Shown piece by piece: positions 4,180-58,857 of a DNA stretch of 64,000 nucleotides. The stretch is from Zootoca vivipara (lineage: Eukaryota), in NCBI RefSeq assembly GCF_963506605.1, contig NC_083285.1, positions 38,254,001-38,318,000 on the forward strand. The letters are read 5' to 3'. The stretch's first letter is position 1. Each line of letters opens with the position of its first letter. Position numbers and translations under genes: made by a program. The notes beneath the pieces are model-generated. The model did no database searches and was not told the DNA's origin. It worked only from the letters and a program-made list of their open reading frames with translations.

Positions 4180-4608
4180 CGCCCCTCGAGAATCGAAGCT
4201 CCCTGTCGCGGGAGAAGCGTTTGGGCCGCGCTCTCCGCCGCTCCCGCCTGACTCGAATTTAAACTGCGCGACAGAGAGCTCGCGCAAAGTACCGACTCCT
4301 AAAGGGAACCCGCGCGCGGCTCCTCTCCGCCGCGCAGCCAATCACAGGGCAGCTCTGCGATTGCGCCGACCAATGCCGGCGCGCTTTATTGGCGGGCGAG
4401 CGAGGGGGGACGTTCGCGCTGTGCGGGAGTTGGGTGCGTTAAAACGCTGGGCAAGGCTGTTCGCCCCTCTCTTTCCATCCCGCCCCTCCTCTTCCTCCTC
4501 TCCTTCCTCCCTCCCACCACCCTCCTCCTCCTCCTTCCCCTCTTTGTTGGCGGTTCCTTCTCTCTCGCTGTCTCCTGGGAGGGCGGCGACAAGAGCCCGA
4601 GCCTGGCG
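4180..4608 (+). promoter_or_regulatory. TMPO: TMPO CpG-island promoter and 5'UTR with CCAAT boxes and E2F-like sites
   Basis: CpG-rich from ~3760 to 5560. CCAAT at 4338 and 4370, ATTGG at 4388, E2F-like TTGGCGGG at 4389. Confidence 0.7.
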
Positions 4609-4878
4609 ATGCCCGAGTTCCTGGCGGACCCGTCGGTGCTCACCAAGGAGAAGCTGAAGAGCGAGCTGATCGCCAACAATGTGAGCCTGCCGGGCGGCGA
4701 GCAGCGCAAGGACGTGTATGTGCAGCTCTACCTCCAGCACCTCACTTCGAGGAACGCGCAGGGAGCCCAGGCGCAGCCCGATTTCTCCAGCGAAGAGGAG
4801 CAGGAGCCCAGCCCGGTCGTCGCCAGGAACAGAATCGGCGGAGATGGTGGCGCCGCCGCGACCGTCGCCGTGGGCCGG
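4609..4878 (+). CDS. TMPO: Thymopoietin/LAP2beta coding exon 1 (LEM-like domain)
   Basis: [25 protein letters not shown]... matches the LAP2 N-terminus; donor GTAAGC at 4879. Confidence 0.96.
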
Positions 4879-6374
4879 GTAAGCCGCGCCGCCCTCCTCC
4901 CCCCCCCGGTGGCCGTTATCAGGCGCCAGAGCAGATTACGAGCCCGGAAAGCGGCCTCCGAGCGCTGAGGGGGCGGCGGAGTTTTCCCGCTTTCTTTGGC
5001 AGGGGGCGGCGCCATGTTTCCTCACCGGCGGGCGGGGCGCGCGCGCGAGAGAGAGATGGTGCCTGCGCGTGGATAGAAACTGCTTTGGTGGAAGCAGGCA
5101 GGCAGGAAGTCTGCTGGGGGAAGGGGGCGCCTGGTAAGCTGAAAAGTGCCGCTCCAACCTCTAGTGGCAAAACGCGACCGGAATGGCCAAAAATGGGCCC
5201 TCTGCCCTGGGCCGTCCTCTGATTCCCCCCTCGCCCCAAAAGCTGTCACCTGCTGCCCTCCTGTGGCGCCGCAGACGGCTCTTTCTATAAGGAGGGTTGC
5301 GAAGAGCTCTCCTAAAAGGAATTTGAACTTAGCAGGCGCCCTGCCAGGCGCAAGAAGGGTTTCACTTCTGCATAACTTGTCGCTGGCAAGGCACGTGGTG
5401 GGCCTTGGCTCCGCGCCCTGTGCTGCACACTACACCAGGCCCCTTCTTCTCCCCGTGAAAAATCCGAGCTAGGCCCCTCGCGACCCACGTTATCATCCTG
5501 AGCACTTTCGCGTCAAGAGTACGTTTCCTTGAGCGCACGAACCTACTTCCATGTTGCACTGGGCATGAATGTGAGGTTCGGGACAGTAAAAGTGGTTGCC
5601 TTTGTAAAATCCCTTTTAAGCTTGTTTATTTAAAGCTGTTCTGCACTTTTATGGCTGAACTTCTTTGACTGTTTTTTGCTCCTTCTGCGTAATCGATCAA
5701 AGGTATTCGCGCTTCCAAGTAATCGTCCCCTGCCTCTTTAAAAACAGTCTTCTAAAAGGCAAATTAATGAACGTGGCCATAAAATAGCGTGTTGCAAGAT
5801 TCTGCATCTTGTCATGACTTGAAAGTTTTCAAGCAGGGATTCAGTTTCAAATAACAGGTGTTTGGTGTCAAAGAGTAGTGACTTTTGGAGCACTGAACAG
5901 CTAAGTTTTAAGAGCTGTGCAGATAAGGAAATATTAGGTGACCAAACTTCTTTTGAAGCACCTCAGAGACTTGACCTGATGATATTTAAAGGGCACATAA
6001 ATGTTGATCCTACTCCCTTCATGTAGTGAAGGTTGAGCTGTCCTCTGAAACCTACAAGAAAGAGCAAAGGAAAGGGTAGCTAGAAATTGTAGAAAATAAA
6101 ATTATGGATTTTAGCAACTTCCATCTGTATTTTTGTTTAAAATCCCCCACTCTTAATTATCCTTTGGAATGATGCCTCATGGATTTTGCTTTTAGGGCAA
6201 TCCTGTGTAGCAATTTCAGCAACGAAAATATTGGCAAACCCAATTTAAAGTTGCAAGTGCACCTCCAGAAAAGGAATATTAATCAGAAAGTTTGGGACAA
6301 CCACTCCAAATTGCTTGATGTGGTGTTTGTGCCCGTGGAGCATTTGTTTCTGAGACACTGAACCATTTACTGTA

Positions 6375-33287: not shown

Positions 33288-33534
33288 AACATGCTCCCTT
33301 AGATCCATCTTTGTTAGATGTCTCTTGTGCTGAGTTCTGCTTAAAGCTTTGGTTTTGAGTAGTTCCATCCAAGAGGGATCAACAACTTTATGGTTGTACA
33401 GTCAAAGATGCTTGAGTCATTGGCATGTGAGAATAATATACCTTCACTCTGGTCTTTTATGTTCTGATAGCAATGGCTGTAATACAATACATGTCATTTT
33501 CCACTATCAGGATTTGGCTAGACTGTGGACATTT
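33288..33534 (+). ncRNA. SNORA53: H/ACA snoRNA SNORA53
   Basis: Lies in the SLC25A3 intron after exon 5, as in mammals. Starts AACATGCTCCCTTAGATCCA; contains GTCAAAGATGCTTGAGTCATTGGCATGT; H box AGAATA at 33430; ACA at 33529-31, 3 nt from the end; 247 nt. Recognised from memory of the human sequence. Confidence 0.9.
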
Positions 33535-38201: not shown

Positions 38202-38957
38202 CTATTTCAAATCTGAAACGTCACTTAGTTCATCACTCATAGTTTTAACATCACTCTGAGCAGAAGTCAAATTGAAGAGTTTCTTATTTAGGAAAGAAAT
38301 TTCTTTCTGTCTTTCCATTAGATCCCCAAGCAGTCTCCCTATTCTTAATGTTAGTTCATCTAGCATTGGTTCCAAATGTGCCAAATCCATCTTTAAGTTG
38401 TGTACTTTTGGTTTTAAGTCATTTGCAAAGGCTACTGTTGTAAGAACTTTGGCTCTATCACTTTCCAAATCTAAAAGCTTATTTAATTGCTTGTTAAGTT
38501 CAGCATTCAGCTCAGATGATTTTGTCTTAATGTGTTCTATTTGTCTGGCATTTTCAGATGCAGAACTCCGTAGTATTGTAGTCCTGTCAATGCTGTTTGT
38601 AAGGAGAGTCCCTATACTTTTTATTGTAGTCCTTTCAGCTTTATCAACTTTGTCTTCTAGAGTATGTAGATTCTCTACCAGTGAGGTTACATCTGCTTCA
38701 AGACCTGAAATGCGTCTAATATCAGTCTTCACAGCGGCAATCTTTACAGAGAAGTTATTAGTTACTGAAGCGATAATCTCCTCATATTTAGTAACTGCAC
38801 GAAAGAGAGATGTTAAGTTCTGCTGAAGCTCCTCTTCTTCTTGACTTAACTTACTAGACCAGATCTGCATGGTGTTCACTTCCTCCTGCAAGTGCTTCAT
38901 CTGAGCAATTATATGAAGATCTTCCAGTTGCTCCATTAAGCTTAATGTCTTCTCACA
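38202..38957 (-). CDS. IKBIP: IKBIP distal alternative terminal exon (347-aa isoform)
   Basis: ttag|CEKTLSLMEQLEDL...KTDIRRISGL...LESDRAKVL...FANDLKPKVHNLK; coiled coil; phase 0. Confidence 0.92.
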   Translation of the reverse strand, partial: CEKTLSLMEQLEDLHIIAQMKHLQEEVNTMQIWSSKLSQEEEELQQNLTSLFRAVTKYEEIIASVTNNFSVKIAAVKTDIRRISGLEADVTSLVENLHTLEDKVDKAERTTIKSIGTLLTNSIDRTTILRSSASENARQIEHIKTKSSELNAELNKQLNKLLDLESDRAKVLTTVAFANDLKPKVHNLKMDLAHLEPMLDELTLRIGRLLGDLMERQKEISFLNKKLFNLTSAQSDVKTMSDELSDVSDLK

Positions 38958-40938: not shown

Positions 40939-41757
40939 TCACTCGTCATTCACACTGTGGTACTTTTCTATATATTTTTCTGTTTCTGTTGTAGATTCTG
41001 CAAAGTCATGGACTTTCTCTTTTAACACAAGCACTTCATTCTGCAGTTTTAGTAGGCTGTTATCATACTGCATGCCTTCAAGCGTTTTTTGTATGTCCAT
41101 TATATCAGATACAGCTTTCATCATTTCATCTTCCACACTGAACACCTTTATAGTCATGTCTTCCATTTTCTTCTCTACAGCCGTTAGATCCCTTGATAGT
41201 CTAACAACAGAGTGAATCGCATTCTCTATTGCTGGTAAATGAGTTTTGCACTCTTCCAGTTTGGGTTCATAGACTGCAAGCTTTTGCCTTAGATCATTAT
41301 TTCTGGCTAATATACTGTTCTGCTGCTCTTCTAATTTTCCAACTGCCTTGGTATCAGACTGTAGCTGCTGCTCAACTTTAGCCAGTTCATCTTCCTCTTG
41401 CCTACTTAATGTTTTGAGGTTTCTTACAGTACTGTCTTCAAGATCTTTCAGTCTTTCAGAAAGGGATTTTAGTTTTTGATCTGCTGCGTTGATTTGAGAG
41501 GTCACTTCGATATGTAAAAGCCTGGCTTCCGATTTTAAACTGCTAGTATTTGTATCCAGTTCAGTCTGGCTCTTTTCCCAGGACTTAATTATATTTTGAA
41601 AATTTGCATCAGTGGTCTGCATCTTTTTAGAGAGTGCCTGCTCACTGTTTTGAATGTCACGTATTATGTTACGGAGGTTAGATACTTCTTGTTCAAACTT
41701 GGTCACCATGGAGAGAAAGAAAGAGGCTTCCTGCAGGATACCCGAAGAAGATTCAAA
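40939..41757 (-). CDS. IKBIP: IKBIP proximal alternative terminal exon (368-aa isoform)
   Basis: tgcag|FESSSGILQEAS...KFEQEVSNL...PKLEECKTHLPAIENAIHS...; phase 0; stop TGA at 40941-40939. Confidence 0.92.
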   Translation of the reverse strand, partial: FESSSGILQEASFFLSMVTKFEQEVSNLRNIIRDIQNSEQALSKKMQTTDANFQNIIKSWEKSQTELDTNTSSLKSEARLLHIEVTSQINAADQKLKSLSERLKDLEDSTVRNLKTLSRQEEDELAKVEQQLQSDTKAVGKLEEQQNSILARNNDLRQKLAVYEPKLEECKTHLPAIENAIHSVVRLSRDLTAVEKKMEDMTIKVFSVEDEMMKAVSDIMDIQKTLEGMQYDNSLLKLQNEVLVLKEKVHDFAESTTETEKYIEKYHSVNDE

Positions 41758-42377
41758 CTGCATTTGTAACACAAAACAATGTCCATCTTCACTTAATACA
41801 GATTTTGCACTTTTTTTTAAAAAAAAAATTATACAAAGGTTTTCGATAAACATAATAAGTTTTGTGTGTGTGTGTGTATATATATATATACAGGTGAAAC
41901 TCGGAAAATTAGAATATCTGCAGCAAAATGAATGTTGCTTTTTAAAAGTAACAGCAGAAAGCAAAACATGAAAAGAAAAAAGACAAACCATTTAAGCTAT
42001 AGTCTCATGATCACAAGACTCACACAATAAATATTAGAATATTTTTCATAAGTAATTGCACTATACAAGGTAAAACTTAAATGCCATTAAATGAATACAA
42101 TTTCAAACAGCATAAATGCTTCTGGTAGAGATACTGATAATTTTTGAATACATTCTTAATTAGCATTTATTCAGTATTATGCTCTATGACATTCAAAAGG
42201 TAAAATAGTGGCTGCAATATGGCACAGACTTATTTCTCAGCAAGTATGTTTAGCAGCTCAAATCAATTTAAAGTGTAATCGACTCAGGAAAAAAGTTCAG
42301 TGTTACTTCCAGGAAGTTTGCATAAGATTGAAACTTTAAGCATCTGGTTTTCAGAGAAGAAACTGACTTCATTCATT

Positions 42378-42382
<5 letters not shown>

Positions 42383-42431
<49 letters not shown>
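42383..42431. repeat. (TA)n microsatellite, left flank of BovB copy 1
   Basis: Direct reading; a matching (AT)n tract lies at 45656-45707. Confidence 0.95.
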
Positions 42432-42433
<2 letters not shown>

Positions 42434-42560
42434 CCTTCATGGATCAATGCCTTGTCATGGCGAAGGGGCTTGAATAACTCGGAGAAGCTATGAGCTATGC
42501 CATGCAGGGCCACCCAAGATGGACAGGTCATAGTGGAGAGTTTTGACTAAACGTGATCCA
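42432..42560 (+). ncRNA. Predicted HDV-like self-cleaving ribozyme at the BovB 5' end (copy 1, L3 G>A variant)
   Basis: P1 CCCCTTC/GAAGGGG, P2 TGGATCA/TGATCCA, P3 GCC/GGC, L3 TTGTCAT, P1.1 G-C, P4 base AACTC/GAGTT, J4/2 CTAA. Manual fold only. Confidence 0.65.
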
Positions 42561-45500
42561 CCTGGAGAAGGAACTGGCAAGCCACTCCAGTATCCCTGCC
42601 AAGAAAACTCCATGGACAAAGACAACAGGCATATAAAAGTTATGACGCTGGAAGATGAGCCCCTCAGGTCGGAAGGCGTCCAACATGCTACTGAGGAAGA
42701 GCGGAGGACAAGTACAAGTAGATTCAGAGCTGATGAAGCGACTGGGCCAAAGCCGAAAGGATGCTCAGTTGCGGATATGCCTGGAAGCGAAAGGAAAGTC
42801 CGATGCTGTAAAGAAAAATATTGCATAGGAACCTGGAATGTAAGAACCATGAGTGGAGGTAAGCTGGATGTGGTCAAAAATGAGATGACAAGAATAAATA
42901 TCGACATCCTGGGCATCAGTGAACTAAAATGGAAGGGAATGGGCGAATTCAGTTCGGGTGACTATCATATCTACTACTGTGGGCAAGAATCCTGTAGCAG
43001 AAATGGAGTGGCCCTCATAGTCAACAAAAGAGTGGCAAAAGCTGTAATGGGATGCAATCTCAAAAATGACAGAATGATCTCGATACGAATCCAAGGCAGA
43101 CCTTTTAACATCACAGTAATCCAAGTTTATGCACCAACTACCGGTGCTGAAGAAAGTGAAATTGACCAATTCTATGAAGACCTACAACAACTTCTAGAAA
43201 TGACACCAAAGAAGGATGTTCTTCTCATTACAGGGGATTGGAATGCTAAAGTAGGGAATCAAGAGATAAAAGGAACAACTGGCAAGTTTGGCCTTGGAGT
43301 TCAAAATGAAGCAGGGCAAAGGCTAATAGAGTTCTGTCAAGAGAACAAGCTGGTCATCACAAACACTCTCTTCCAACAACACAAGAGACGACTCTACACA
43401 TGGATATCACCAAATGGGCAGCATCGAAATCAGATTGATTATATTCTCTGCAGCCAAAGATGGAGAAGCTCTATACAGTCAGCAAAAACAAGACCTGGAG
43501 CTGACTGTAACTCAGATCATCAGCTTCTTATAGCAAAATTCCAGCTTAAACTGAAGAAAGTAGGAAAAACCACTGGGCCAGTAAGATACAATCTGAATCA
43601 AATCCCTTATGAATACACAGTGGAAGTGAGGAACAGGTTTAAGGATTTAGATTTGGTGGACAGAGTGCCTGAAGAACTATGGATGGAGGCTCGTAACATT
43701 ATACAGGAGGCAGCAACGAAAACCATCCCAAGGAAAAGGAAATGCAAGAAAGCAAAATGGCTATCCAACAAGGCCTTACAAATAGCGGAGGAGAGGAGGC
43801 AAGCAAAATGCAAGGGAGATAGGGAAAGATACAGGAAACTGAATGCAGATTTCCAAAAAACAGCAAGGAGAGACAAGAGGGTCTTCTTAAATGAGCAATG
43901 CAAAGAAATAGAGGAAAACAATAGAATGGGGAAAACCAGAGATCTGTTCAAGAAAATTGGAGATATGAAAGGAACATTTCGTACAAAGATTACCATAATC
44001 AAGGACAAAAGTGGTAAGGACCTAACAGAAGCAGAAGACATCAAGAAGAGGTGGCAGGAATACACAGAGGAATTATACCAGAAAGATATGGAGGTCTCGT
44101 ACACCCCAGGTAGTGTGGTTGCTGACCTTGAGCCAGACATCTTGGAGAGTGAAGTCAAATGGGCCTTAGAAAGCACTGCTAATAACAAGGCCAGTGGAAG
44201 TGATGATATTCCAGCTGAACTATTTAAAATTTTAAAAGATGATGCTGTTAAGGTGCTACACCCAATATGCCAGCAAGTTTGGAAAACTCAGCAATGGCCA
44301 GAGGATTGGAGAAGATCAGTCTACACCCCAATTCCAAAGAAGGGCAGTGCCAAAGAATGCTCCAACTACCGCACAATTGCGCTCATTTCACACGCTAGCA
44401 AGGTTATGCTTAAAATTCTACAAGGCAGGCTTAGGCAGTATGTGGACCGAGAACTCCCAGAAGTGCAAGCTGGATTTCGAAAGGGCAGAGGAATCAGAGA
44501 CCAAATAGCAAACATGCGCTGGATTATGGAGAAAGCTAGAGAGTTCCAGAAAAACGTCTACTTCTGCTTCATTGACTATGCAAAAGCCTTCGACTGTGTC
44601 GACCACAGCAAACTATGGCAAGTTCTTAAAGAAATGGGAGTGCCTGATCACCTCATCTGTCTCCTGAGAAATCTCTATGTGGGACAAGAAGCTACAGTTA
44701 GAACTGGATATGGAACAACTGATTGGTTCAAAATTGGGAAAGGAGTACGACAAGGTTGTATATTGTCTCCCTGCTTATTTAACTTATATGCAGAATTCAT
44801 CATGCGAAAGGCTGGACTAGATGAATCCCAAGCCGGAATTAAGATTGCCGGAAGAAATATCAACAACCTCAGATATGCAGATGACACAACCTTGATGGCA
44901 GAAAGCGAGGAGGAATTAAAGAACCTTTTAATGAGGGTGAAAGAGGAGAGCGCAAAATATGGTCTGAAGCTCAACATCAAAAAAACCAAGATCATGGCCA
45001 CTGGTCCCATCACCTCCTGGCAAATAGAAGGGGAAGAAATGGAGGCAGTGAGAGATTTTACTTTCTTGGGCTCCTTGATCACTGCAGATGGTGACAGCAG
45101 TCACGAAATTAAAAGACGCCTGCTTCTTGGGAGAAAAGCAATGACAAACCTAGACAGCATCTTAAAAAGCAGAGACATCACTTTGCCGACAAAGGTCCGT
45201 ATAGTTAAAGCTATGGTTTTCCCAGTAGTGATGTATGGAAGTGAGAGCTGGACCATAAAGAAGGCTGATCGTCGAAGAATTGATGCTTTTGAATTATGGT
45301 GCTGGAGGAGACTCTTGAGAGTCCCATGGACTGCTAGAAGATCAAACCTATCCATTCTTAAGGAAATCAGCCCTGAGTGCTCCCTGGAAGGACAGATCGT
45401 GAAGCTGAGGCTCCAATACTTTGGCCACCTCATGAGAAGAGAAGAATCCTTGGAAAAGACCCTGATGTTGGGAAAGATGGAGGGCACTAGGAGAAGGGGA

Positions 45501-45644
45501 CGACAGAGGACGAGATGGTTGGACAGTGTTCTCGAAGCTACGAACATGAGTTTGACCAAACTGCGGGAGGCAGTGCAAGACAGGAGTGCCTGGCGTGCTA
45601 TGGTCCATGGGGTCACGAAGAGTCGGACACGACTAAACGACTAA
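42543..45644 (+). CDS. BovB endonuclease-reverse transcriptase ORF (1033 codons from TTG; first ATG at 42612)
   Basis: APE motifs GTWNVR, ILGISE, GDWN, IDYI, SDH; RT motifs QGCILSP and YADD; no stops. Confidence 0.95.
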   Translation: MTKRDPPGEGTGKPLQYPCQENSMDKDNRHIKVMTLEDEPLRSEGVQHATEEERRTSTSRFRADEATGPKPKGCSVADMPGSERKVRCCKEKYCIGTWNVRTMSGGKLDVVKNEMTRINIDILGISELKWKGMGEFSSGDYHIYYCGQESCSRNGVALIVNKRVAKAVMGCNLKNDRMISIRIQGRPFNITVIQVYAPTTGAEESEIDQFYEDLQQLLEMTPKKDVLLITGDWNAKVGNQEIKGTTGKFGLGVQNEAGQRLIEFCQENKLVITNTLFQQHKRRLYTWISPNGQHRNQIDYILCSQRWRSSIQSAKTRPGADCNSDHQLLIAKFQLKLKKVGKTTGPVRYNLNQIPYEYTVEVRNRFKDLDLVDRVPEELWMEARNIIQEAATKTIPRKRKCKKAKWLSNKALQIAEERRQAKCKGDRERYRKLNADFQKTARRDKRVFLNEQCKEIEENNRMGKTRDLFKKIGDMKGTFRTKITIIKDKSGKDLTEAEDIKKRWQEYTEELYQKDMEVSYTPGSVVADLEPDILESEVKWALESTANNKASGSDDIPAELFKILKDDAVKVLHPICQQVWKTQQWPEDWRRSVYTPIPKKGSAKECSNYRTIALISHASKVMLKILQGRLRQYVDRELPEVQAGFRKGRGIRDQIANMRWIMEKAREFQKNVYFCFIDYAKAFDCVDHSKLWQVLKEMGVPDHLICLLRNLYVGQEATVRTGYGTTDWFKIGKGVRQGCILSPCLFNLYAEFIMRKAGLDESQAGIKIAGRNINNLRYADDTTLMAESEEELKNLLMRVKEESAKYGLKLNIKKTKIMATGPITSWQIEGEEMEAVRDFTFLGSLITADGDSSHEIKRRLLLGRKAMTNLDSILKSRDITLPTKVRIVKAMVFPVVMYGSESWTIKKADRRRIDAFELWCWRRLLRVPWTARRSNLSILKEISPECSLEGQIVKLRLQYFGHLMRREESLEKTLMLGKMEGTRRRGRQRTRWLDSVLEATNMSLTKLREAVQDRSAWRAMVHGVTKSRTRLND

Positions 45645-45655
<11 letters not shown>

Positions 45656-45707
<52 letters not shown>
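45656..45707. repeat. (AT)n microsatellite, right flank of BovB copy 1
   Basis: Direct reading. Confidence 0.95.
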
Positions 45708-45711
<4 letters not shown>

Positions 45712-54375: not shown

Positions 54376-54892
54376 GTACTGTCAATAGTGTGAAGAAATA
54401 TTTGCATATTTCAAGTCAGCTACTAGAATTGTGTTGTTTTTGTTTCATTTATGTACTCATTGGCTTAATCAAGACTTTTCTAAGGACTCAGCTAGACTGG
54501 TAAAGAGATTTTTATGTGTTGTATGTGCGCTATAACATTGTTTTTCTCTACCTGTTTTCCCTGTTTCAATTTACAACGCTTTAAATTGAAACGCTTCTTA
54601 GATGTGTCTAGATCCAGCCCAAGTCACAATTAGCAATGCTCTATCTTCTAGCATGTGAATTTTAAGTTCCTTACCATTGGTGAATTCTTTGCACGTTTAC
54701 TTGCTTGACAAGAATTCTAGATTGCATGCTTGGTTCATCTAGAGCAGGGTGATCCAACTTCTCAGACCAAGTGGGCTGCAATAGTACTTCTACACAGAAC
54801 CTGCAGGACACACACTGAATTAAATTTCCAGGTCATAAATTGAAGGGTTCGCAATGTAGGTAATATTATTTAATATACACAATTGTTGTTGT

Positions 54893-57800
54893 TTAGTCGT
54901 TTAGTCGTGTCCGACTCTTCGTGACCCCATGGACCATAGCACGCCAGGCACTCCTGTCTTGCACTGCCTCCCGCAGTTTGGTCAAACTCATGTTCGTAGC
55001 TTCGAGAACACTGTCCAACCATCTTGTCCTCTGTCGTCCCCTTCTCCTAGTGCCCTCAATCTTTCCCAACATCAGGGTCTTTTCCAAGGATTCTTCTCTT
55101 CTCATGAGGTGGCCAAAGTATTGGAGCCTCAGCTTCACGATCTGTCCTTCCAGGGAGCACTCAGGGCTGATTTCCTTAAGAATGGATAGGTTTGATCTTC
55201 TAGCAGTCCATGGGACTCTCAAGAGTCTCCTCCAGCACCATAATTCAAAAGCATCAATTCTTCGACGATCAGCCTTCTTTATGGTCCAGCTCTCACTTCC
55301 ATACATCACTACTGGGAAAACCATAGCTTTAACTATACGGACCTTTGTCGGCAAAGTGATGTCTCTGCTTTTTAAGATGCTGTCTAGGTTTGTCATTGCT
55401 TTTCTCCCAAGAAGCAGGCGTCTTTTAATTTCGTGACTGCTGTCACCATCTGCAGTGATCAAGGAGCCCAAGAAAGTAAAATCTCTCACTGCCTCCATTT
55501 CTTCCCCTTCTATTTGCCAGGAGGTGATGGGACCAGTGGCCATGATCTTGGTTTTTTTGATGTTGAGCTTCAGACCATATTTTGCGCTCTCCTCTTTCAC
55601 CCTCATTAAAAGGTTCTTTAATTCCTCCTCGCTTTCTGCCATCAAGGTTGTGTCATCTGCATATCTGAGGTTGTTGATATTTCTTCCGGCAATCTTAATT
55701 CCGGCTTGGGATTCATCTAGTCCAGCCTTTCGCATGATGAATTCTGCATATAAGTTAAATAAGCAGGGAGACAATATACAACCTTGTCGTACTCCTTTCC
55801 CAATTTTGAACCAATCAGTTGTTCCATATCCAGTTCTAACTGTAGCTTCTTGTCCCACATAGAGATTTCTCAGGAGACAGATGAGGTGATCAGGCACTCC
55901 CATTTCTTTAAGAACTTGCCATAGTTTGCTGTGGTCGACACAGTCAAAGGCTTTTGCATAGTCAATGAAGCAGAAGTAGACGTTTTTCTGGAACTCTCTA
56001 GCTTTCTCCATAATCCAGCGCATGTTTGCTATTTGGTCTCTGGTTCCTCTGCCCTTTCGAAATCCAGCTTGCACTTCTGGGAGTTCTCGGTCCACATACT
56101 GCCTAAGCCTGCCTTGTAGAATTTTAAGCATAACCTTGCTAGCGTGTGAAATGAGCGCAATTGTGCGGTAGTTAGAGCATTCTTTGGCACTGCCCTTCTT
56201 TGGAATTGGGATGTAGACTGATCTTTTCCAATCCTCTGGCCATTGCTGAGTTTTCCAAACTTGCTGGCATATTGGGTGTAGCACCTTAACAGCATCATCT
56301 TTTAAAATTTTAAATAGTTCAGCTGGAATATCATCACTTCCACTGGCCTTGTTATTAGCAATGCTTTCTAAGGCCCATTTGACTTCACTCTCCAAGATGT
56401 CTGGCTCAAGGTCAGCAACCACACTACCTGGGGTGTATGAGACCTCCATATCTTTCTGGTATAATTCCTCTGTGTATTCTTGCCACCTCTTCTTGATGTC
56501 TTCTGCTTCTGTTAGGTCCTTACCACTTTTGTCCTTGATTATGGTAATCTTTGTACGAAATGTTCCTTTCATATCACCAATTTTCTTGAACAGATCTCTG
56601 GTTTTCCCCATTCTATTGTTTTCCTCTATTTCTTTGCATTGCTCATTTAAGAAGACCCTCTTGTCTCTCCTTGCTGTTTTTTGGAAATCTGCATTCAGTT
56701 TCCTGTATCTTTCCCTATCTCCCTTGCATTTTGCTTGCCTCCTCTCCTCCGCTATTTGTAAGGCCTCGTTGGACAGCCATTTTGCTTTCTTGCATTTCCT
56801 TTTCCTTGGGATGGTTTTCATTGCTGCCTCCTGTATAATGTTACGAGCCTCCATCCATAGTTCTTCAGGCACTCTGTCCACCAAATCTAAATCCTTAAAC
56901 CTGTTCCTCACTTCCACTGTGTATTCATAAGGGATTTGATTCAGATTGTATCTTACTGGCCCAGTGGTTTTTCCTACTTTCTTCAGTTTAAGCTGGAATT
57001 TTGCTATAAGAAGCTGATGATCTGAGTTACAATCAGCTCCAGGTCTTGTTTTTGCTGACTGTATAGAGCTTCTCCATCTTTGGCTGCAGAGAATATAATC
57101 AATCTGATTTCGATGCTGCCCATTTGGTGATATCCATGTGTAGAGTCGTCTCTTGTGTTGTTGGAAGAGAGTGTTTGTGATGACCAGCTTGTTCTCTTGA
57201 CAGAACTCTATTAGCCTTTGCCCTGCTTCATTTTGAACTCCAAGGCCAAACTTGCCAGTTGTTCCTTTTATCTCTTGATTCCCTACTTTAGCATTCCAAT
57301 CCCCTGTAATGAGAAGAACATCCTTCTTTGGTGTCATTTCTAGAAGTTGTTGTAGGTCTTCATAGAATTGGTCAATTTCACTTTCTTCAGCACCAGTAGT
57401 TGGTGCATAAACTTGGATTACTGTGATGTTAAAAGGTCTGCCTTGGATTCGTATCGAGATCATTCTGTCATTTTTGAGATTGCATCCCATTACAGCTTTT
57501 GCCACTCTTTTGTTGACTATGAGGGCCACTCCATTTCTGCTACAGGATTCTTGCCCACAGTAGTAGATATGATAGTCACCCGAACTGAATTCGCCCATTC
57601 CCTTCCATTTTAGTTCACTGATGCCCAGGATGTCGATATTTATTCTTGTCATCTCATTTTTGACCACATCCAGCTTACCTCTATTCATGGTTCTTACATT
57701 CCAGGTTCCTATGCAATATTTTTCTTTACAGCATCGGACTTTCCTTTCGCTTCCAGGCATATCCGCAACTGAGCGTCCTTTCGGCTTTGGCCCAGCCGCT

Positions 57801-57994
57801 TCATCAGCTCTGAATCTACTTGTACTTATCCTCCGCTCTTCCTCAGTAGCATGTTGGACGCCTTCCGACCTGAGGGGCTCATCTTCCAGCGTCATAACTT
57901 TTATATGCCTGTTGTCTTTGTCCATGGAGTTTTCTTGGCAGGGATACTGGAGTGGCTTGCCAGTTCCTTCTCCAGGTGGATCACGTTTAGTCAA
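54893..57994 (-). CDS. BovB endonuclease-reverse transcriptase ORF, copy 2
   Basis: 1033 codons; about 12 aa differences from copy 1 by eye; all APE and RT motifs intact. Confidence 0.95.
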   Translation of the reverse strand: MTKRDPPGEGTGKPLQYPCQENSMDKDNRHIKVMTLEDEPLRSEGVQHATEEERRISTSRFRADEAAGPKPKGRSVADMPGSERKVRCCKEKYCIGTWNVRTMNRGKLDVVKNEMTRINIDILGISELKWKGMGEFSSGDYHIYYCGQESCSRNGVALIVNKRVAKAVMGCNLKNDRMISIRIQGRPFNITVIQVYAPTTGAEESEIDQFYEDLQQLLEMTPKKDVLLITGDWNAKVGNQEIKGTTGKFGLGVQNEAGQRLIEFCQENKLVITNTLFQQHKRRLYTWISPNGQHRNQIDYILCSQRWRSSIQSAKTRPGADCNSDHQLLIAKFQLKLKKVGKTTGPVRYNLNQIPYEYTVEVRNRFKDLDLVDRVPEELWMEARNIIQEAAMKTIPRKRKCKKAKWLSNEALQIAEERRQAKCKGDRERYRKLNADFQKTARRDKRVFLNEQCKEIEENNRMGKTRDLFKKIGDMKGTFRTKITIIKDKSGKDLTEAEDIKKRWQEYTEELYQKDMEVSYTPGSVVADLEPDILESEVKWALESIANNKASGSDDIPAELFKILKDDAVKVLHPICQQVWKTQQWPEDWKRSVYIPIPKKGSAKECSNYRTIALISHASKVMLKILQGRLRQYVDRELPEVQAGFRKGRGTRDQIANMRWIMEKAREFQKNVYFCFIDYAKAFDCVDHSKLWQVLKEMGVPDHLICLLRNLYVGQEATVRTGYGTTDWFKIGKGVRQGCILSPCLFNLYAEFIMRKAGLDESQAGIKIAGRNINNLRYADDTTLMAESEEELKNLLMRVKEESAKYGLKLNIKKTKIMATGPITSWQIEGEEMEAVRDFTFLGSLITADGDSSHEIKRRLLLGRKAMTNLDSILKSRDITLPTKVRIVKAMVFPVVMYGSESWTIKKADRRRIDAFELWCWRRLLRVPWTARRSNLSILKEISPECSLEGQIVKLRLQYFGHLMRREESLEKTLMLGKIEGTRRRGRQRTRWLDSVLEATNMSLTKLREAVQDRSAWRAMVHGVTKSRTRLND

Positions 57995-58105
57995 AACTCT
58001 CCACTATGACCTGTCCATCTTGGGTGGCCCTGCATGGCATAGCTCATAGCTTCTCTGAGTTATTCAAGCCCCTTCGCCACGACAAGGCATTGATCCATGA
58101 AGGGG
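57977..58105 (-). ncRNA. Predicted HDV-like self-cleaving ribozyme at the BovB 5' end (copy 2, L3 intact)
   Basis: Same fold as 42432-42560 but with L3 = TTGTCGT, retaining the U20/G25-equivalent pair. Confidence 0.7.
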
Positions 58106-58857
58106 AATATACACAATTAACATATTTAATTGAAAATGGAAGAGAATGGTCATTAGCGCTAGCAATGCTCCTTTAGTACTTTAGTACAAAAAAGGCTGCC
58201 CTGCAGGCTTTGTGTTGAACCACTCTGACCTAAAGCATCAGCCAGATTTGTTAGCTGTCATTAATAGAACTCCTTACTCCCATTTGATTCTAGTTGTAAC
58301 GAGCAATATGTTGAACATGTGTCCAAAAGACTTACAGAATTGATTCAATATTACTAGTTCTAGACTATGGCTTCTCCACAGTCACCAGCTATCTCTGGCT
58401 GATCTCAACTCATCTAGATTCAGAATTTAGCAGTATTTAGCTTTTTCTGTTGTGTTTTTTGGAACATACCTAGCTGTTTTTTGGAAAACAACTATCTTTT
58501 AACAAATGTGTTCAAATGAGGTAATGAATACAATATTACCAAGCCCTTTAACTCTGCAAATGTTTGTTAAATGTAAAATACATAGAAAATGCTTCTCACT
58601 AACTGTAGAACTGCTATGTTTTAGTCCAGTCAAGCTCTTGAGAGTTGTCCCAGACAATAATTCTTTCTTCTGGGCAATTTTAGTTGTTGTGGATATAAAG
58701 CACATGGGACTCAATTTTTTTGTTTAGAATAAATATTTAAAAGGGAGCATGTTTGAAAAATGAAATGAAATGAAAAGTCTATTGGTTCTTAACATATTAA
58801 GGAATCTCCAAAGCAGGTGTACAGTGCCTCCAAGCTTGACATGTTTTTTTCTAATAG

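What the first reader, a model, noticed from the sequence alone, without database searches (positions are those of the whole stretch)
57977..58105. HDV/CPEB3-like ribozyme fold defines the exact 5' end of BovB LINEs
Seen: on the minus strand the element begins CCCCTTC-A-TGGATCA-AT-GCC-TTGTCGT-GGC-GAAGGGG-CT-...AACTC...GAGTT-TTGA-CTAA-ACG-TGATCCA. This gives the HDV nested double pseudoknot in the correct order: 7-bp P1, 7-bp P2, 3-bp P3, 7-nt L3, P1.1, extended P4, J4/2. L3 (UUGUCGU) parallels CPEB3 L3 (UUCACGU), with a compensatory P1.1 swap (L3 G pairs with the C after P1', then U.U). J4/2 CUAA matches the catalytic-C context of antigenomic HDV. Both independent insertions start at exactly P1 nucleotide 1, the predicted cleavage site. 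Known: HDV-like ribozymes process the 5' ends of R2, ingi/L1Tc and some invertebrate RTE elements. Inference: BovB cuts itself out of read-through transcripts, needing little host-specific promoter, which could help explain its wide horizontal transfer. I do not recall this being characterised for vertebrate BovB. Caveat: the +1 pair is C-G rather than the usual G.U or purine +1.
Basis: partly seen in the sequence, partly recalled or inferred. Interest (0 to 1): 0.9.

Follow-up and report, generated by a model that had tools for sequence, protein, structure and literature searches.

The report
HDV-like ribozyme at lizard BovB start
The first 129 bases of two young, intact BovB jumping genes in this lizard sequence can fold like the self-cutting HDV ribozyme, with the predicted cut exactly at the element's first base. 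This is a known trick of related insect elements that I could not find described for vertebrate BovB; cutting itself is untested.

Summary
The window is from a lacertid lizard. It holds two full-length (~3.22 kb), 99% identical BovB/RTE LINEs, each with an intact 1033-codon frame. Copy 2 is flanked by a 13-bp target-site duplication, which fixes its first base at C58105, the first base of the proposed P1.

A loose HDV descriptor is worthless: shuffled windows give about 75 hits. A strict one hits the window only at 58105(-) and gives 0.33 hits per shuffled window.

One more distant relative, metagenome locus L004 (59% aa identity), has the same fold at the same distance from its ATG, built from different helix sequences. 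Rfam's HDV-F-prausnitzii model matches it end to end (26.3 bits, E about 0.002, below the gathering score).

Three limits:
- Ruminant-type BovB keeps P2 and P4 but lacks P3' and P1', and carries more than 400 nt of extra conserved 5' sequence. The claim does not hold for BovB in general.
- Copy 1 has a G-to-A change at the L3 guanine that is essential in other HDV-like ribozymes, so it is probably dead.
- Cleavage is untested, the first pair is C-G, and Rfam does not detect the lizard sequence.

Verdict: a probable new member of a known kind; the horizontal-transfer link is speculation.

The parts
54885..58105 (-). BovB/RTE LINE copy 2, full length (~3221 nt)
   Evidence: 99% identical to copy 1 over 3252 nt. 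Ends are set by the target-site duplication.
58106..58118 (-). 5' copy of the target-site duplication AATTGTGTATATT of copy 2
   Evidence: Read directly. The same 13-mer follows the 3' tail.
54872..54884 (-). 3' copy of the target-site duplication of copy 2. The first AA could instead belong to the (AAC)n tail.
57977..58105 (-). Proposed HDV-like ribozyme of copy 2 (129 nt), with the L3 guanine intact
58099..58105 (-). P1 5' strand CCCCUUC. The predicted cleavage site is 5' of C58105.
   Evidence: Perfect complement of 58075-58069; duplex -11.2 kcal/mol.
58091..58097 (-). P2 5' strand UGGAUCA, followed by the linker AU at 58090-58089
   Evidence: Perfect complement of 57983-57977; -8.3 kcal/mol. 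The ruminant homologue keeps the pairing with a U-A to C-G swap.
58076..58088 (-). P3 GCC, L3 UUGUCGU, P3' GGC
   Evidence: L004 has ACC UUUACGU GGU; the Rfam RF02682 consensus is aCC UCUaCGU GGu.
58067..58075 (-). P1' GAAGGGG plus J1/4 CU. C58068 can pair with the L3 G58083 to form P1.1.
   Evidence: In L004 the equivalent pair is U-A.
57991..58066 (-). Long P4 region (76 nt) closed by AACUC/GAGUU
   Evidence: Fold -21.4 kcal/mol, z = -1.8. The inner hairpin is shared with ruminant copies, with one compensatory pair.
57984..57990 (-). J4/2 CUAAACG. C57990 is the putative catalytic cytosine.
   Evidence: It is the first unpaired base after P4. It matches GCUAAG in the RF02682 consensus and GCCAA in L004.
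57977..57983 (-). P2 3' strand UGAUCCA
57948..57976 (-). Conserved hairpin motif CCUGGAGAAGGAACUGGCAAGCCACUCCAG directly after the ribozyme
   Evidence: The same motif lies in the 5' UTR of ruminant BovB, L004, L006, L008 and L026, and in the 3' UTR of about ten other RTE loci.
54893..57925 (-). ORF of copy 2 from the first ATG (endonuclease plus reverse transcriptase). The frame is open from 57994.
42432..45656 (+). BovB/RTE LINE copy 1, full length, inserted in a (TA)n tract
42432..42560 (+). Ribozyme homologue of copy 1. L3 is UUGUCAU (G->A at 42457) and the J4/2 C is at 42547.
   Evidence: It fails the strict descriptor only because of this base.
42612..45644 (+). ORF of copy 1: 1010 aa with Exo_endo_phos and RVT_1 domains
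   Evidence: Pfam E = 2e-13 and 1e-40. 98% identical to a Zootoca vivipara protein.

Best explanation
The first 129 nt of this lacertid BovB (RTE-clade LINE) encode an HDV-like, double-pseudoknot self-cleaving ribozyme.

Shown:
- The fold can be drawn.
- It begins at the first base of the element.
- One relative has the same fold at the same place.

Inferred:
- The element is transcribed as part of a longer host or read-through transcript.
- The ribozyme folds co-transcriptionally and cuts 5' of C1. C57990 in J4/2 acts as general acid, and a Mg2+ ion is held by the L3 U/G reverse wobble.
- This releases an RNA whose 5' end is exactly element nucleotide 1. That RNA is the template that is translated and reverse-transcribed, which explains why full-length copies start at that base.
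- The structured, uncapped 5' end may also protect the RNA or help translation of the ORF that opens inside J4/2, as proposed for R2 and RTE ribozymes.

Copy 2 keeps every core feature. Copy 1 has lost the L3 guanine, probably by CpG decay after insertion, and is predicted to be inactive.
For: - Exact pairing scheme.
- The 5' end is fixed independently by a 13-bp target-site duplication, and the two copies lose similarity at that base.
- The strict descriptor gives one hit in the window, at 58105(-), against 0.33 per shuffled window.
- L004 (59% aa identity) has P1 CUCUCAU/AUGAGAG, P3 ACC/GGU, L3 UUUACGU, a P1.1 U-A pair, a compact P4, J4/2 GCCAA and P2 GUGCA/UGCGC. It starts 186 nt before the ATG, against 180 nt in the window.
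- Rfam RF02682 aligns to L004 643-720 over the whole model (26.3 bits, E = 0.0017-0.0037) and starts at the predicted P1 base.
- Between lizard and L004, 5 of 7 P1 pairs, 1 of 3 P3 pairs and the P1.1 pair differ on both sides yet stay paired.
- P2 shows a compensatory U-A to C-G change between lizard and ruminant copies.
- Literature: HDV-like ribozymes cut at the 5' junction in RTE, R4, L1Tc and Drosophila R2 (PMC3774820, PMC5786205, PMC6765202).
Against: - No cleavage data.
- Rfam finds nothing in the lizard sequence, even at E <= 10 on 50-500 nt slices.
- The nested minimum-free-energy fold does not contain P1 or P3 and is no more stable than shuffles (z = -0.34).
- The first P1 pair is C-G. 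HDV itself needs a G.U wobble there (PMC1874588), although the RF02682 consensus has G-C.
- P1.1 is only one Watson-Crick pair plus U.U.
- A 2-nt linker and a 7-nt J4/2 make the P2/P3 junction looser than in HDV.
- Only one comparative sequence has the full fold. L008 has P2, P3 and L3 but no clean P1.
- Ruminant-type BovB has lost P3' and P1'.
- The 'covariation' with L004 is partly by construction, because a descriptor that demands helices found it.
Confidence: 0.68

Rival explanations
1. It is a structured 5' UTR that descends from, or resembles, an HDV-like ribozyme but no longer cuts. Its present job would be something else: binding the element's own protein, protecting the 5' end, aiding cap-independent translation, or acting as DNA in an internal promoter (as Pr77 does in L1Tc). 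The 5' end would then be set by transcription initiation.
For: - Ruminant BovB keeps P2, P4 and J4/2 with compensatory changes although P3' and P1' are gone, so that part has a use independent of cleavage.
- The first pair is C-G, P1.1 is weak and J4/2 is long.
- There is no Rfam hit in the lizard.
- In L1Tc the same 77 nt act as both promoter and ribozyme (PMC3383444).
Against: - The catalytic-core details serve no obvious purpose in a mere binding site, yet all are kept in copy 2 and in L004: L3 U...CG., the C directly after P4, A-rich J4/2, and P3' abutting P1'.
- P1 begins at base 1 in a very young, evidently active family.
Confidence: 0.22
2. It is a chance resemblance. Any 130-nt GC-balanced stretch offers many short complementary segments, and the reader picked a set that fits the HDV order.
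For: - The loose helix-only descriptor hits about 75 positions per shuffled window.
- The nested fold is not unusually stable.
- The strict descriptor was written after the candidate had been seen.
Against: - The strict descriptor gives about 3e-6 per position, and the hit falls on the one base marked by the target-site duplication.
- An independent relative shows the same fold at the same offset from its ATG and is picked up by an Rfam covariance model.
- P2 covaries in ruminant copies.
Confidence: 0.07

Closest known systems
[quoted passage not shown] 2011, cited in PMC5786205, PMC3774820, PMC6765202)
   Same: - Same LINE clade.
- Same position, with the ribozyme at element nucleotide 1.
- Same presumed role: release from a co-transcript and possibly help with translation.
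- Same double-pseudoknot plan.
   Different: - The host is a vertebrate (lacertid lizard) and the element is BovB.
- There is no detectable sequence or covariance-model similarity to the Rfam drz-Agam models.
- P4 is very long (76 nt) and the first pair is C-G.
- The 2011 paper is not in the held library, so I could not check whether it lists any vertebrate RTE.
R2 retrotransposon ribozyme
   Same: - HDV-like fold in the 5' UTR of a single-ORF non-LTR element.
- P1 of 6-7 bp, P2 of at least 5 bp with mismatches tolerated, variable P4 and J1/4.
- Invariant catalytic C and L3 G; a G->A change at that G abolished cleavage in Nasonia R2 (PMC3774820).
   Different: - R2 is site-specific in 28S rDNA, is transcribed by Pol I, and often cuts upstream inside the 28S sequence.
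- BovB inserts widely: here into a (TA)n tract and an AT-rich site.
Rfam RF02682, HDV ribozyme from Faecalibacterium prausnitzii
   Same: - It is the best-matching curated model for the relative L004 (full-length alignment).
- Its consensus core aCC-UCUaCGU-GGu and GCUAAG resembles the lizard GCC-UUGUCGU-GGC and ACUAAA.
- Its first P1 pair is also Watson-Crick.
   Different: - It is a bacterial family.
- The L004 score (26.3 bits) is below the gathering score of 44.
- The lizard sequence is not detected at all.
Mammalian CPEB3 ribozyme
   Different: - It is intronic and not at a transposon end.
- It has a G.U first pair and a short P4.
- It was not compared here. This is a lead, not a test.
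L1Tc/ingi ribozyme (L1TcRz/Pr77) of trypanosomatids
   Same: An HDV-like ribozyme in the first ~77 nt of a LINE, releasing it from long co-transcripts (PMC4035085, PMC3383444).
   Different: - A different LINE clade and a protist host.
- The same DNA also acts as an internal promoter, which was not examined here.

Membership tests
HDV-like self-cleaving ribozymes | Nested double pseudoknot in the order P1-P2-P3-L3-P3'-P1'-P1.1-P4-J4/2-P2' | tested here: met
   All strands are present in that order; P1 7 bp, P2 7 bp and P3 3 bp are all Watson-Crick.
HDV-like self-cleaving ribozymes | P1 of 6-7 bp starting at the cleavage site, with P3' directly abutting P1' | tested here: met
   The 7-bp P1 starts at the first base as defined by the target-site duplication, and there is no spacer between GGC and GAAGGGG.
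HDV-like self-cleaving ribozymes | L3 of about 7 nt with a 5' U and a penultimate G (the reverse wobble that holds the catalytic metal) | tested here: met
   Copy 2 has UUGUCGU. Copy 1 has UUGUCAU, so the feature is not met there. G25A costs about 3000-fold in HDV (PMC1874588), impairs the C. briggsae ribozyme (PMC13635239) and abolishes cleavage in Nasonia R2 (PMC3774820).
HDV-like self-cleaving ribozymes | P1.1: two pairs between L3 and J1/4 | tested here: inconclusive
   There is one Watson-Crick pair (G58083-C58068) plus U.U. In L004 the pair is U-A plus U.U, a change on both sides.
HDV-like self-cleaving ribozymes | Catalytic C as the first unpaired base after P4, followed by an A-rich J4/2 | tested here: met
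   C57990 followed by UAAACG. The RF02682 consensus has GCUAAG and L004 has GCCAA. J4/2 is 7 nt, longer than in HDV.
HDV-like self-cleaving ribozymes | G.U wobble (or a purine at +1) at the cleavage-site pair | tested here: not met
   The pair is C-G in the lizard and also in L004. HDV requires the wobble (PMC1874588), but the RF02682 consensus has a Watson-Crick G-C there, so the feature is not universal in the family.
HDV-like self-cleaving ribozymes | Match to a curated covariance model (Rfam HDV, CPEB3, drz-Agam or HDV-F-prausnitzii families) | tested here: not met
   The lizard gives no hit at the gathering score or at E <= 10. The relative L004 matches RF02682 at 26.3 bits against a gathering score of 44, E = 0.002-0.004. 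Covariance models cannot score the pseudoknot helices, and they penalise the 76-nt P4.
HDV-like self-cleaving ribozymes | Mg2+-dependent self-scission giving a 5'-OH and a 2',3'-cyclic phosphate, abolished by C-to-U at the catalytic C | not testable with these tools
   Needs a bench assay.
RTE/BovB clade of non-LTR retrotransposons | Single ORF of about 1000 aa with an N-terminal APE-type endonuclease and a reverse transcriptase | tested here: met
   Pfam Exo_endo_phos, Exo_endo_phos_2 and RVT_1. 75-80% aa identity to Bos BovB proteins and 93-98% to lacertid proteins.
RTE/BovB clade of non-LTR retrotransposons | Length of about 3.2 kb, very short 3' UTR ending in a simple repeat, no poly(A), target-site duplication | tested here: met
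   3221 and 3225 nt, (AAC)n tail, 13-bp target-site duplication.

The most novel reading that the evidence does not exclude
The HDV-like ribozyme is the ancestral 5' end of the whole BovB-like branch of RTE elements. On this reading it survives, still active, in squamate BovB. Ruminant BovB later deleted P3' and P1' and bolted on a new, more than 400-nt 5' region (presumably a promoter), keeping only P2/P4 as a vestige.

A bolder extension: the mammalian CPEB3 ribozyme has the same UUNNCGU L3 and the same weak P1.1 (this is from memory), so it could be a domesticated 5' end of an ancient RTE-type LINE.
Probability: 0.2. Interest if true: 0.75.

Novelty: new member of a known kind. Interest (0 to 1): 0.55.

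Why it matters
BovB is the textbook case of a LINE spreading horizontally among vertebrates, yet how it is transcribed and how its 5' end is made has not, to my knowledge, been worked out. A self-cleaving 5' ribozyme would mean that a newly arrived copy needs no promoter of its own, only insertion into something that is transcribed. It would also add a vertebrate LINE family with very recent activity to the short list of vertebrate HDV-like ribozymes.

The contrast with ruminant BovB, where the ribozyme core is deleted and a new 5' region added, would be a natural experiment in how a LINE switches from parasitising host transcription to driving its own.

In practice, the natural G->A copy and the intact copy in this window form a ready-made mutant and wild-type pair for a cleavage assay.

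Tried and rejected
- **Rfam.** The lizard gave no ribozyme family at any threshold, and 20 RTE loci gave none at the gathering score. L008 gave no HDV hit. Only L004 scored.
- **Nested MFE folding of the 129 nt.** It does not recover P1 or P3 and gives z = -0.34. This is uninformative for a pseudoknotted RNA.
- **Loose helix-only descriptor.** Rejected as evidence, because shuffles give as many hits as the window.
- **More relatives.** The metagenome scan gave 80 loci, the genome scan 23 and the viral scan none. Only L002, L003, L042, L004, L006, L008, L026 and L074 had usable 5' regions. blastn with the 5' 135 nt found no further homologues. More distant RTEs (34-50% identity) showed no HDV-like hit upstream of the ORF.
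- **The look-up of encoding contigs.** Full-length BovB contigs seen in the protein search, such as Paragonimus, Rotaria and Podarcis, could therefore not be fetched.
- **L004 target-site duplication.** No convincing one was found, so its exact 5' end is unknown.
- **L008.** No clean P1. The best partner is 6 of 7, about 110 nt upstream.
- **MAFFT alignment of lizard and L004 cores.** It put a gap inside P1, so pair counts were made by script instead.
- **Papers not held.** Ruminski 2011, Webb & Luptak 2011, Chen 2009 and Perrotta & Been 1996.

Full report
**What is in the window**

- P1 CCCCTTC, A, P2 TGGATCA, AT
- P3 GCC, L3 TTGTCGT, P3' GGC
- P1' GAAGGGG, J1/4 CT
- a 76-nt region closed by AACTC/GAGTT
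- J4/2 CTAAACG, P2' TGATCCA

A second copy starts at 42432 on the plus strand.

A self-comparison shows two elements of about 3.22 kb that are 99% identical. Each has an intact 1033-codon open frame, which encodes an APE-type endonuclease and a reverse transcriptase. The protein is 98% identical to a Zootoca vivipara protein, 93% to Podarcis muralis proteins and 75-80% to Bos BovB proteins. The window is therefore a lacertid lizard genome, not human, and carries a very young BovB/RTE family. A thymopoietin LEM-domain exon and SNORA53 place it in a gene-rich region.

**Is the 5' end really where P1 starts?**

Yes. Copy 2 is flanked by the 13-bp direct repeat AATTGTGTATATT, at 58118-58106 and 54884-54872. 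The element therefore runs from C58105 to the (AAC)n tail. Copy 1 lies inside a (TA)n tract that continues on both sides. In the pairwise alignment, similarity stops at the C of CCCCTTC.

**Is the fold more than chance?**

A helices-only descriptor is not significant. The window has 99 start positions with P2 of at least 7 bp, and shuffles have 53-86. The bare fact that P1, P2 and P3 can be drawn therefore proves little.

I then wrote a stricter descriptor from published core features. It requires:
- P1 of 7 bp
- P3 of 3 bp abutting P1'
- L3 = U...CG.
- a Watson-Crick P1.1 pair between L3 nt 3 and the base after P1'
- P2 of at least 5 bp
- a C followed by As just before P2'

It hits the 128 kb of both strands once, at 58105(-). 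Twelve shuffled windows gave four hits in all, about 3e-6 per position. Copy 1 fails only because its L3 reads TTGTCAT. The descriptor was written after I had seen the candidate. That weakens the number, but not the fact that the hit falls on the base marked independently by the target-site duplication.

**Relatives**

Relatives therefore came from one metagenome scan, one genome scan and one viral scan that found nothing.

*L004* (59% aa identity) has the same architecture, starting 186 nt before its ATG against 180 nt in the window:
- P1 CUCUCAU/AUGAGAG
- P2 GUGCA/UGCGC
- P3 ACC/GGU
- L3 UUUACGU
- J1/4 AU
- a compact P4, CUUAAAG-AUAU-CUUUAAG
- J4/2 GCCAA

Compared with the lizard, five of seven P1 pairs, one P3 pair and the P1.1 pair differ on both sides and stay paired.

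Independently of my descriptor, Rfam's HDV-F-prausnitzii model (RF02682) aligns to L004 643-720 over its full length. It starts at the predicted first P1 base and scores 26.3 bits with E = 0.0017-0.0037. That is below the gathering score of 44. Its consensus core (aCC UCUaCGU GGu ... GCUAAG) also resembles the lizard core. Even so, the lizard sequence gets no Rfam hit in any slice. The 76-nt P4 is a likely reason.

*L008* (50% identity) has P2 (CAUGCCC/GGGCAUG), P3 ACC/GGU, L3 UUCUCGU and J1/4 GU, but no clean P1. More distant RTEs showed nothing comparable.

**Ruminant-type BovB does not fit**

L002, L003 and L042 (75-77% aa identity) align with the lizard from P4 onwards. They keep a perfect 8-bp P2 (GGACCACA/TGTGGTCC, -13 kcal/mol), with a U-A to C-G swap relative to the lizard. 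They also share the inner P4 hairpin, with one compensatory pair.

After GCCTTGTC, however, they lack about 18 nt, which are P3' and P1'. They have no P1, and they continue upstream for more than 400 nt of sequence shared among copies from different samples. MAFFT offers an alternative ungapped alignment, but only the gapped one explains the preserved P2 complementarity.

L004 is more distant than the ruminant lineage and has the full fold. Loss in the ruminant lineage is therefore the simpler reading, though it rests on very few sequences.

**Likely mechanism**

By analogy with RTE, R2, R4 and L1Tc elements (PMC3774820, PMC5786205, PMC6765202, PMC4035085), the element is probably transcribed within longer transcripts, and the ribozyme cuts 5' of C1. 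This gives the RNA whose reverse transcript starts at that base.

Copy 2 keeps the L3 U and G that form the metal-binding reverse wobble. Copy 1's G->A lies in a CpG and looks like decay after insertion. The same change has these published effects:
- about 3000-fold loss of activity in HDV (PMC1874588)
- marked impairment of a C. briggsae HDV-like ribozyme (PMC13635239)
- abolished cleavage in Nasonia R2 (PMC3774820)

Points against high activity:
- The first pair is C-G, and HDV needs a G.U there (PMC1874588). The RF02682 consensus has G-C, and L004 shares the C-G.
- P1.1 has a single Watson-Crick pair.
- The P2/P3 junction is looser, with a 2-nt linker and a 7-nt J4/2. In ruminant copies those extra bases pair.
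- The nested MFE fold neither contains P1/P3 nor beats shuffles, which says little for a pseudoknot.

**Novelty**

Full-text searches for BovB or Bov-B with 'ribozyme', for RTE-BovB with 'self-cleaving', and for HDV-like with 'lizard' or 'reptiles' found no description of this. HDV-like ribozymes in RTE elements are known from invertebrates. The key paper, Ruminski 2011, is not held, so an earlier vertebrate mention cannot be excluded.

I file this as a new member of a known kind. The idea that it eases horizontal transfer is untested. If anything, it is complicated by the loss of the core in ruminants, the lineage where BovB expanded most.

Noticed in passing
window 57948-57976 (-) and 42561-42589 (+); also L020:1648, L022:7505, L029:9288, L043:3844, L051:1349, L064:4731, L067:1269, L069:3031, L070:5689, L075:2030: The hairpin motif GGAGAAGG.A.UGGCAAaCCACUCC sits right after the ribozyme in the 5' UTR of lizard and ruminant BovB, L004, L006, L008 and L026. 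In about ten other RTE loci it sits just after the ORF, in the 3' UTR. In ruminant copies it is not coding, because a stop lies in frame. It may be the RNA site recognised by the element's protein, and it is the part shared with Bov-A-type SINEs.
   Followed up: partly
L013:1358-1415, L015:276-333, L016:115-175: Distant RTEs (34-37% aa identity) carry an H-type pseudoknot between a short upstream ORF and the main ORF: stem 1 CUGCAGUAG/CUACUGCAG and stem 2 GGGGGC/GCCCCC. Stem 1 covaries among the three loci (CUGCAAUAG/CUAUUGCAG; CUAUACUGG/CCAUGUAUAG), while stem 2 and the flanking GUUCU...GAG are invariant. It does not follow the HDV plan and has no Rfam family at the gathering score. It might act in recoding or reinitiation, or be another processing element.
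   Followed up: partly
L002:1-130, L003:1-350, L042:1-330: Ruminant-type BovB copies share a long extra 5' region with monomer-like repeats (GAGATACCCC.CGTCCAAGGTAAG...) upstream of the vestigial P2. It looks like an acquired 5' UTR or promoter that replaced the ribozyme core.
   Followed up: partly
window 42379-42431 and 45657-45708: Copy 1 is embedded in a (TA)n microsatellite on both sides, and copy 2 inserted at an AT-rich TGTATATT site. This suggests an AT/TA-repeat target preference. A link between RTE elements and microsatellites has been reported in Lepidoptera (reference cited in PMC6765202).
   Followed up: no
window 33288-33533 (+): SNORA53 H/ACA snoRNA: 179.5 bits, full-length match.
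   Followed up: no
window 4303-4965 (+); 38205-38957 (-); 40942-41991 (-): A thymopoietin (TMPO) LEM-domain exon (Pfam E = 7e-28) lies near the start of the window. There are also two long minus-strand open frames just upstream of copy 1: one has weak coiled-coil-type hits and the other has no Pfam hit. The BovB copies therefore lie in or next to genes, so read-through transcription is plausible. I did not work out the gene models.
   Followed up: partly
proteins P0017, P0019, P0037, P0053, P0071; loci L081-L096: Ruminant-type BovB fragments are deposited as 'proteins' or contigs of Staphylococcus aureus, Mycoplasmopsis arginini, Babesia ovata, Sinisalibacter, Aureimonas, several mouse-gut isolates and others. 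They are almost certainly host or reagent (bovine) DNA contamination in those assemblies.
   Followed up: no
L074:1500-1760: Two tRNA-like units (…GAGTAGCTCAGTTGGTAAAG…GGTTCAAATCC…) lie upstream of the RTE 5' region in L074, possibly tRNA-derived SINE heads next to an RTE.
   Followed up: no
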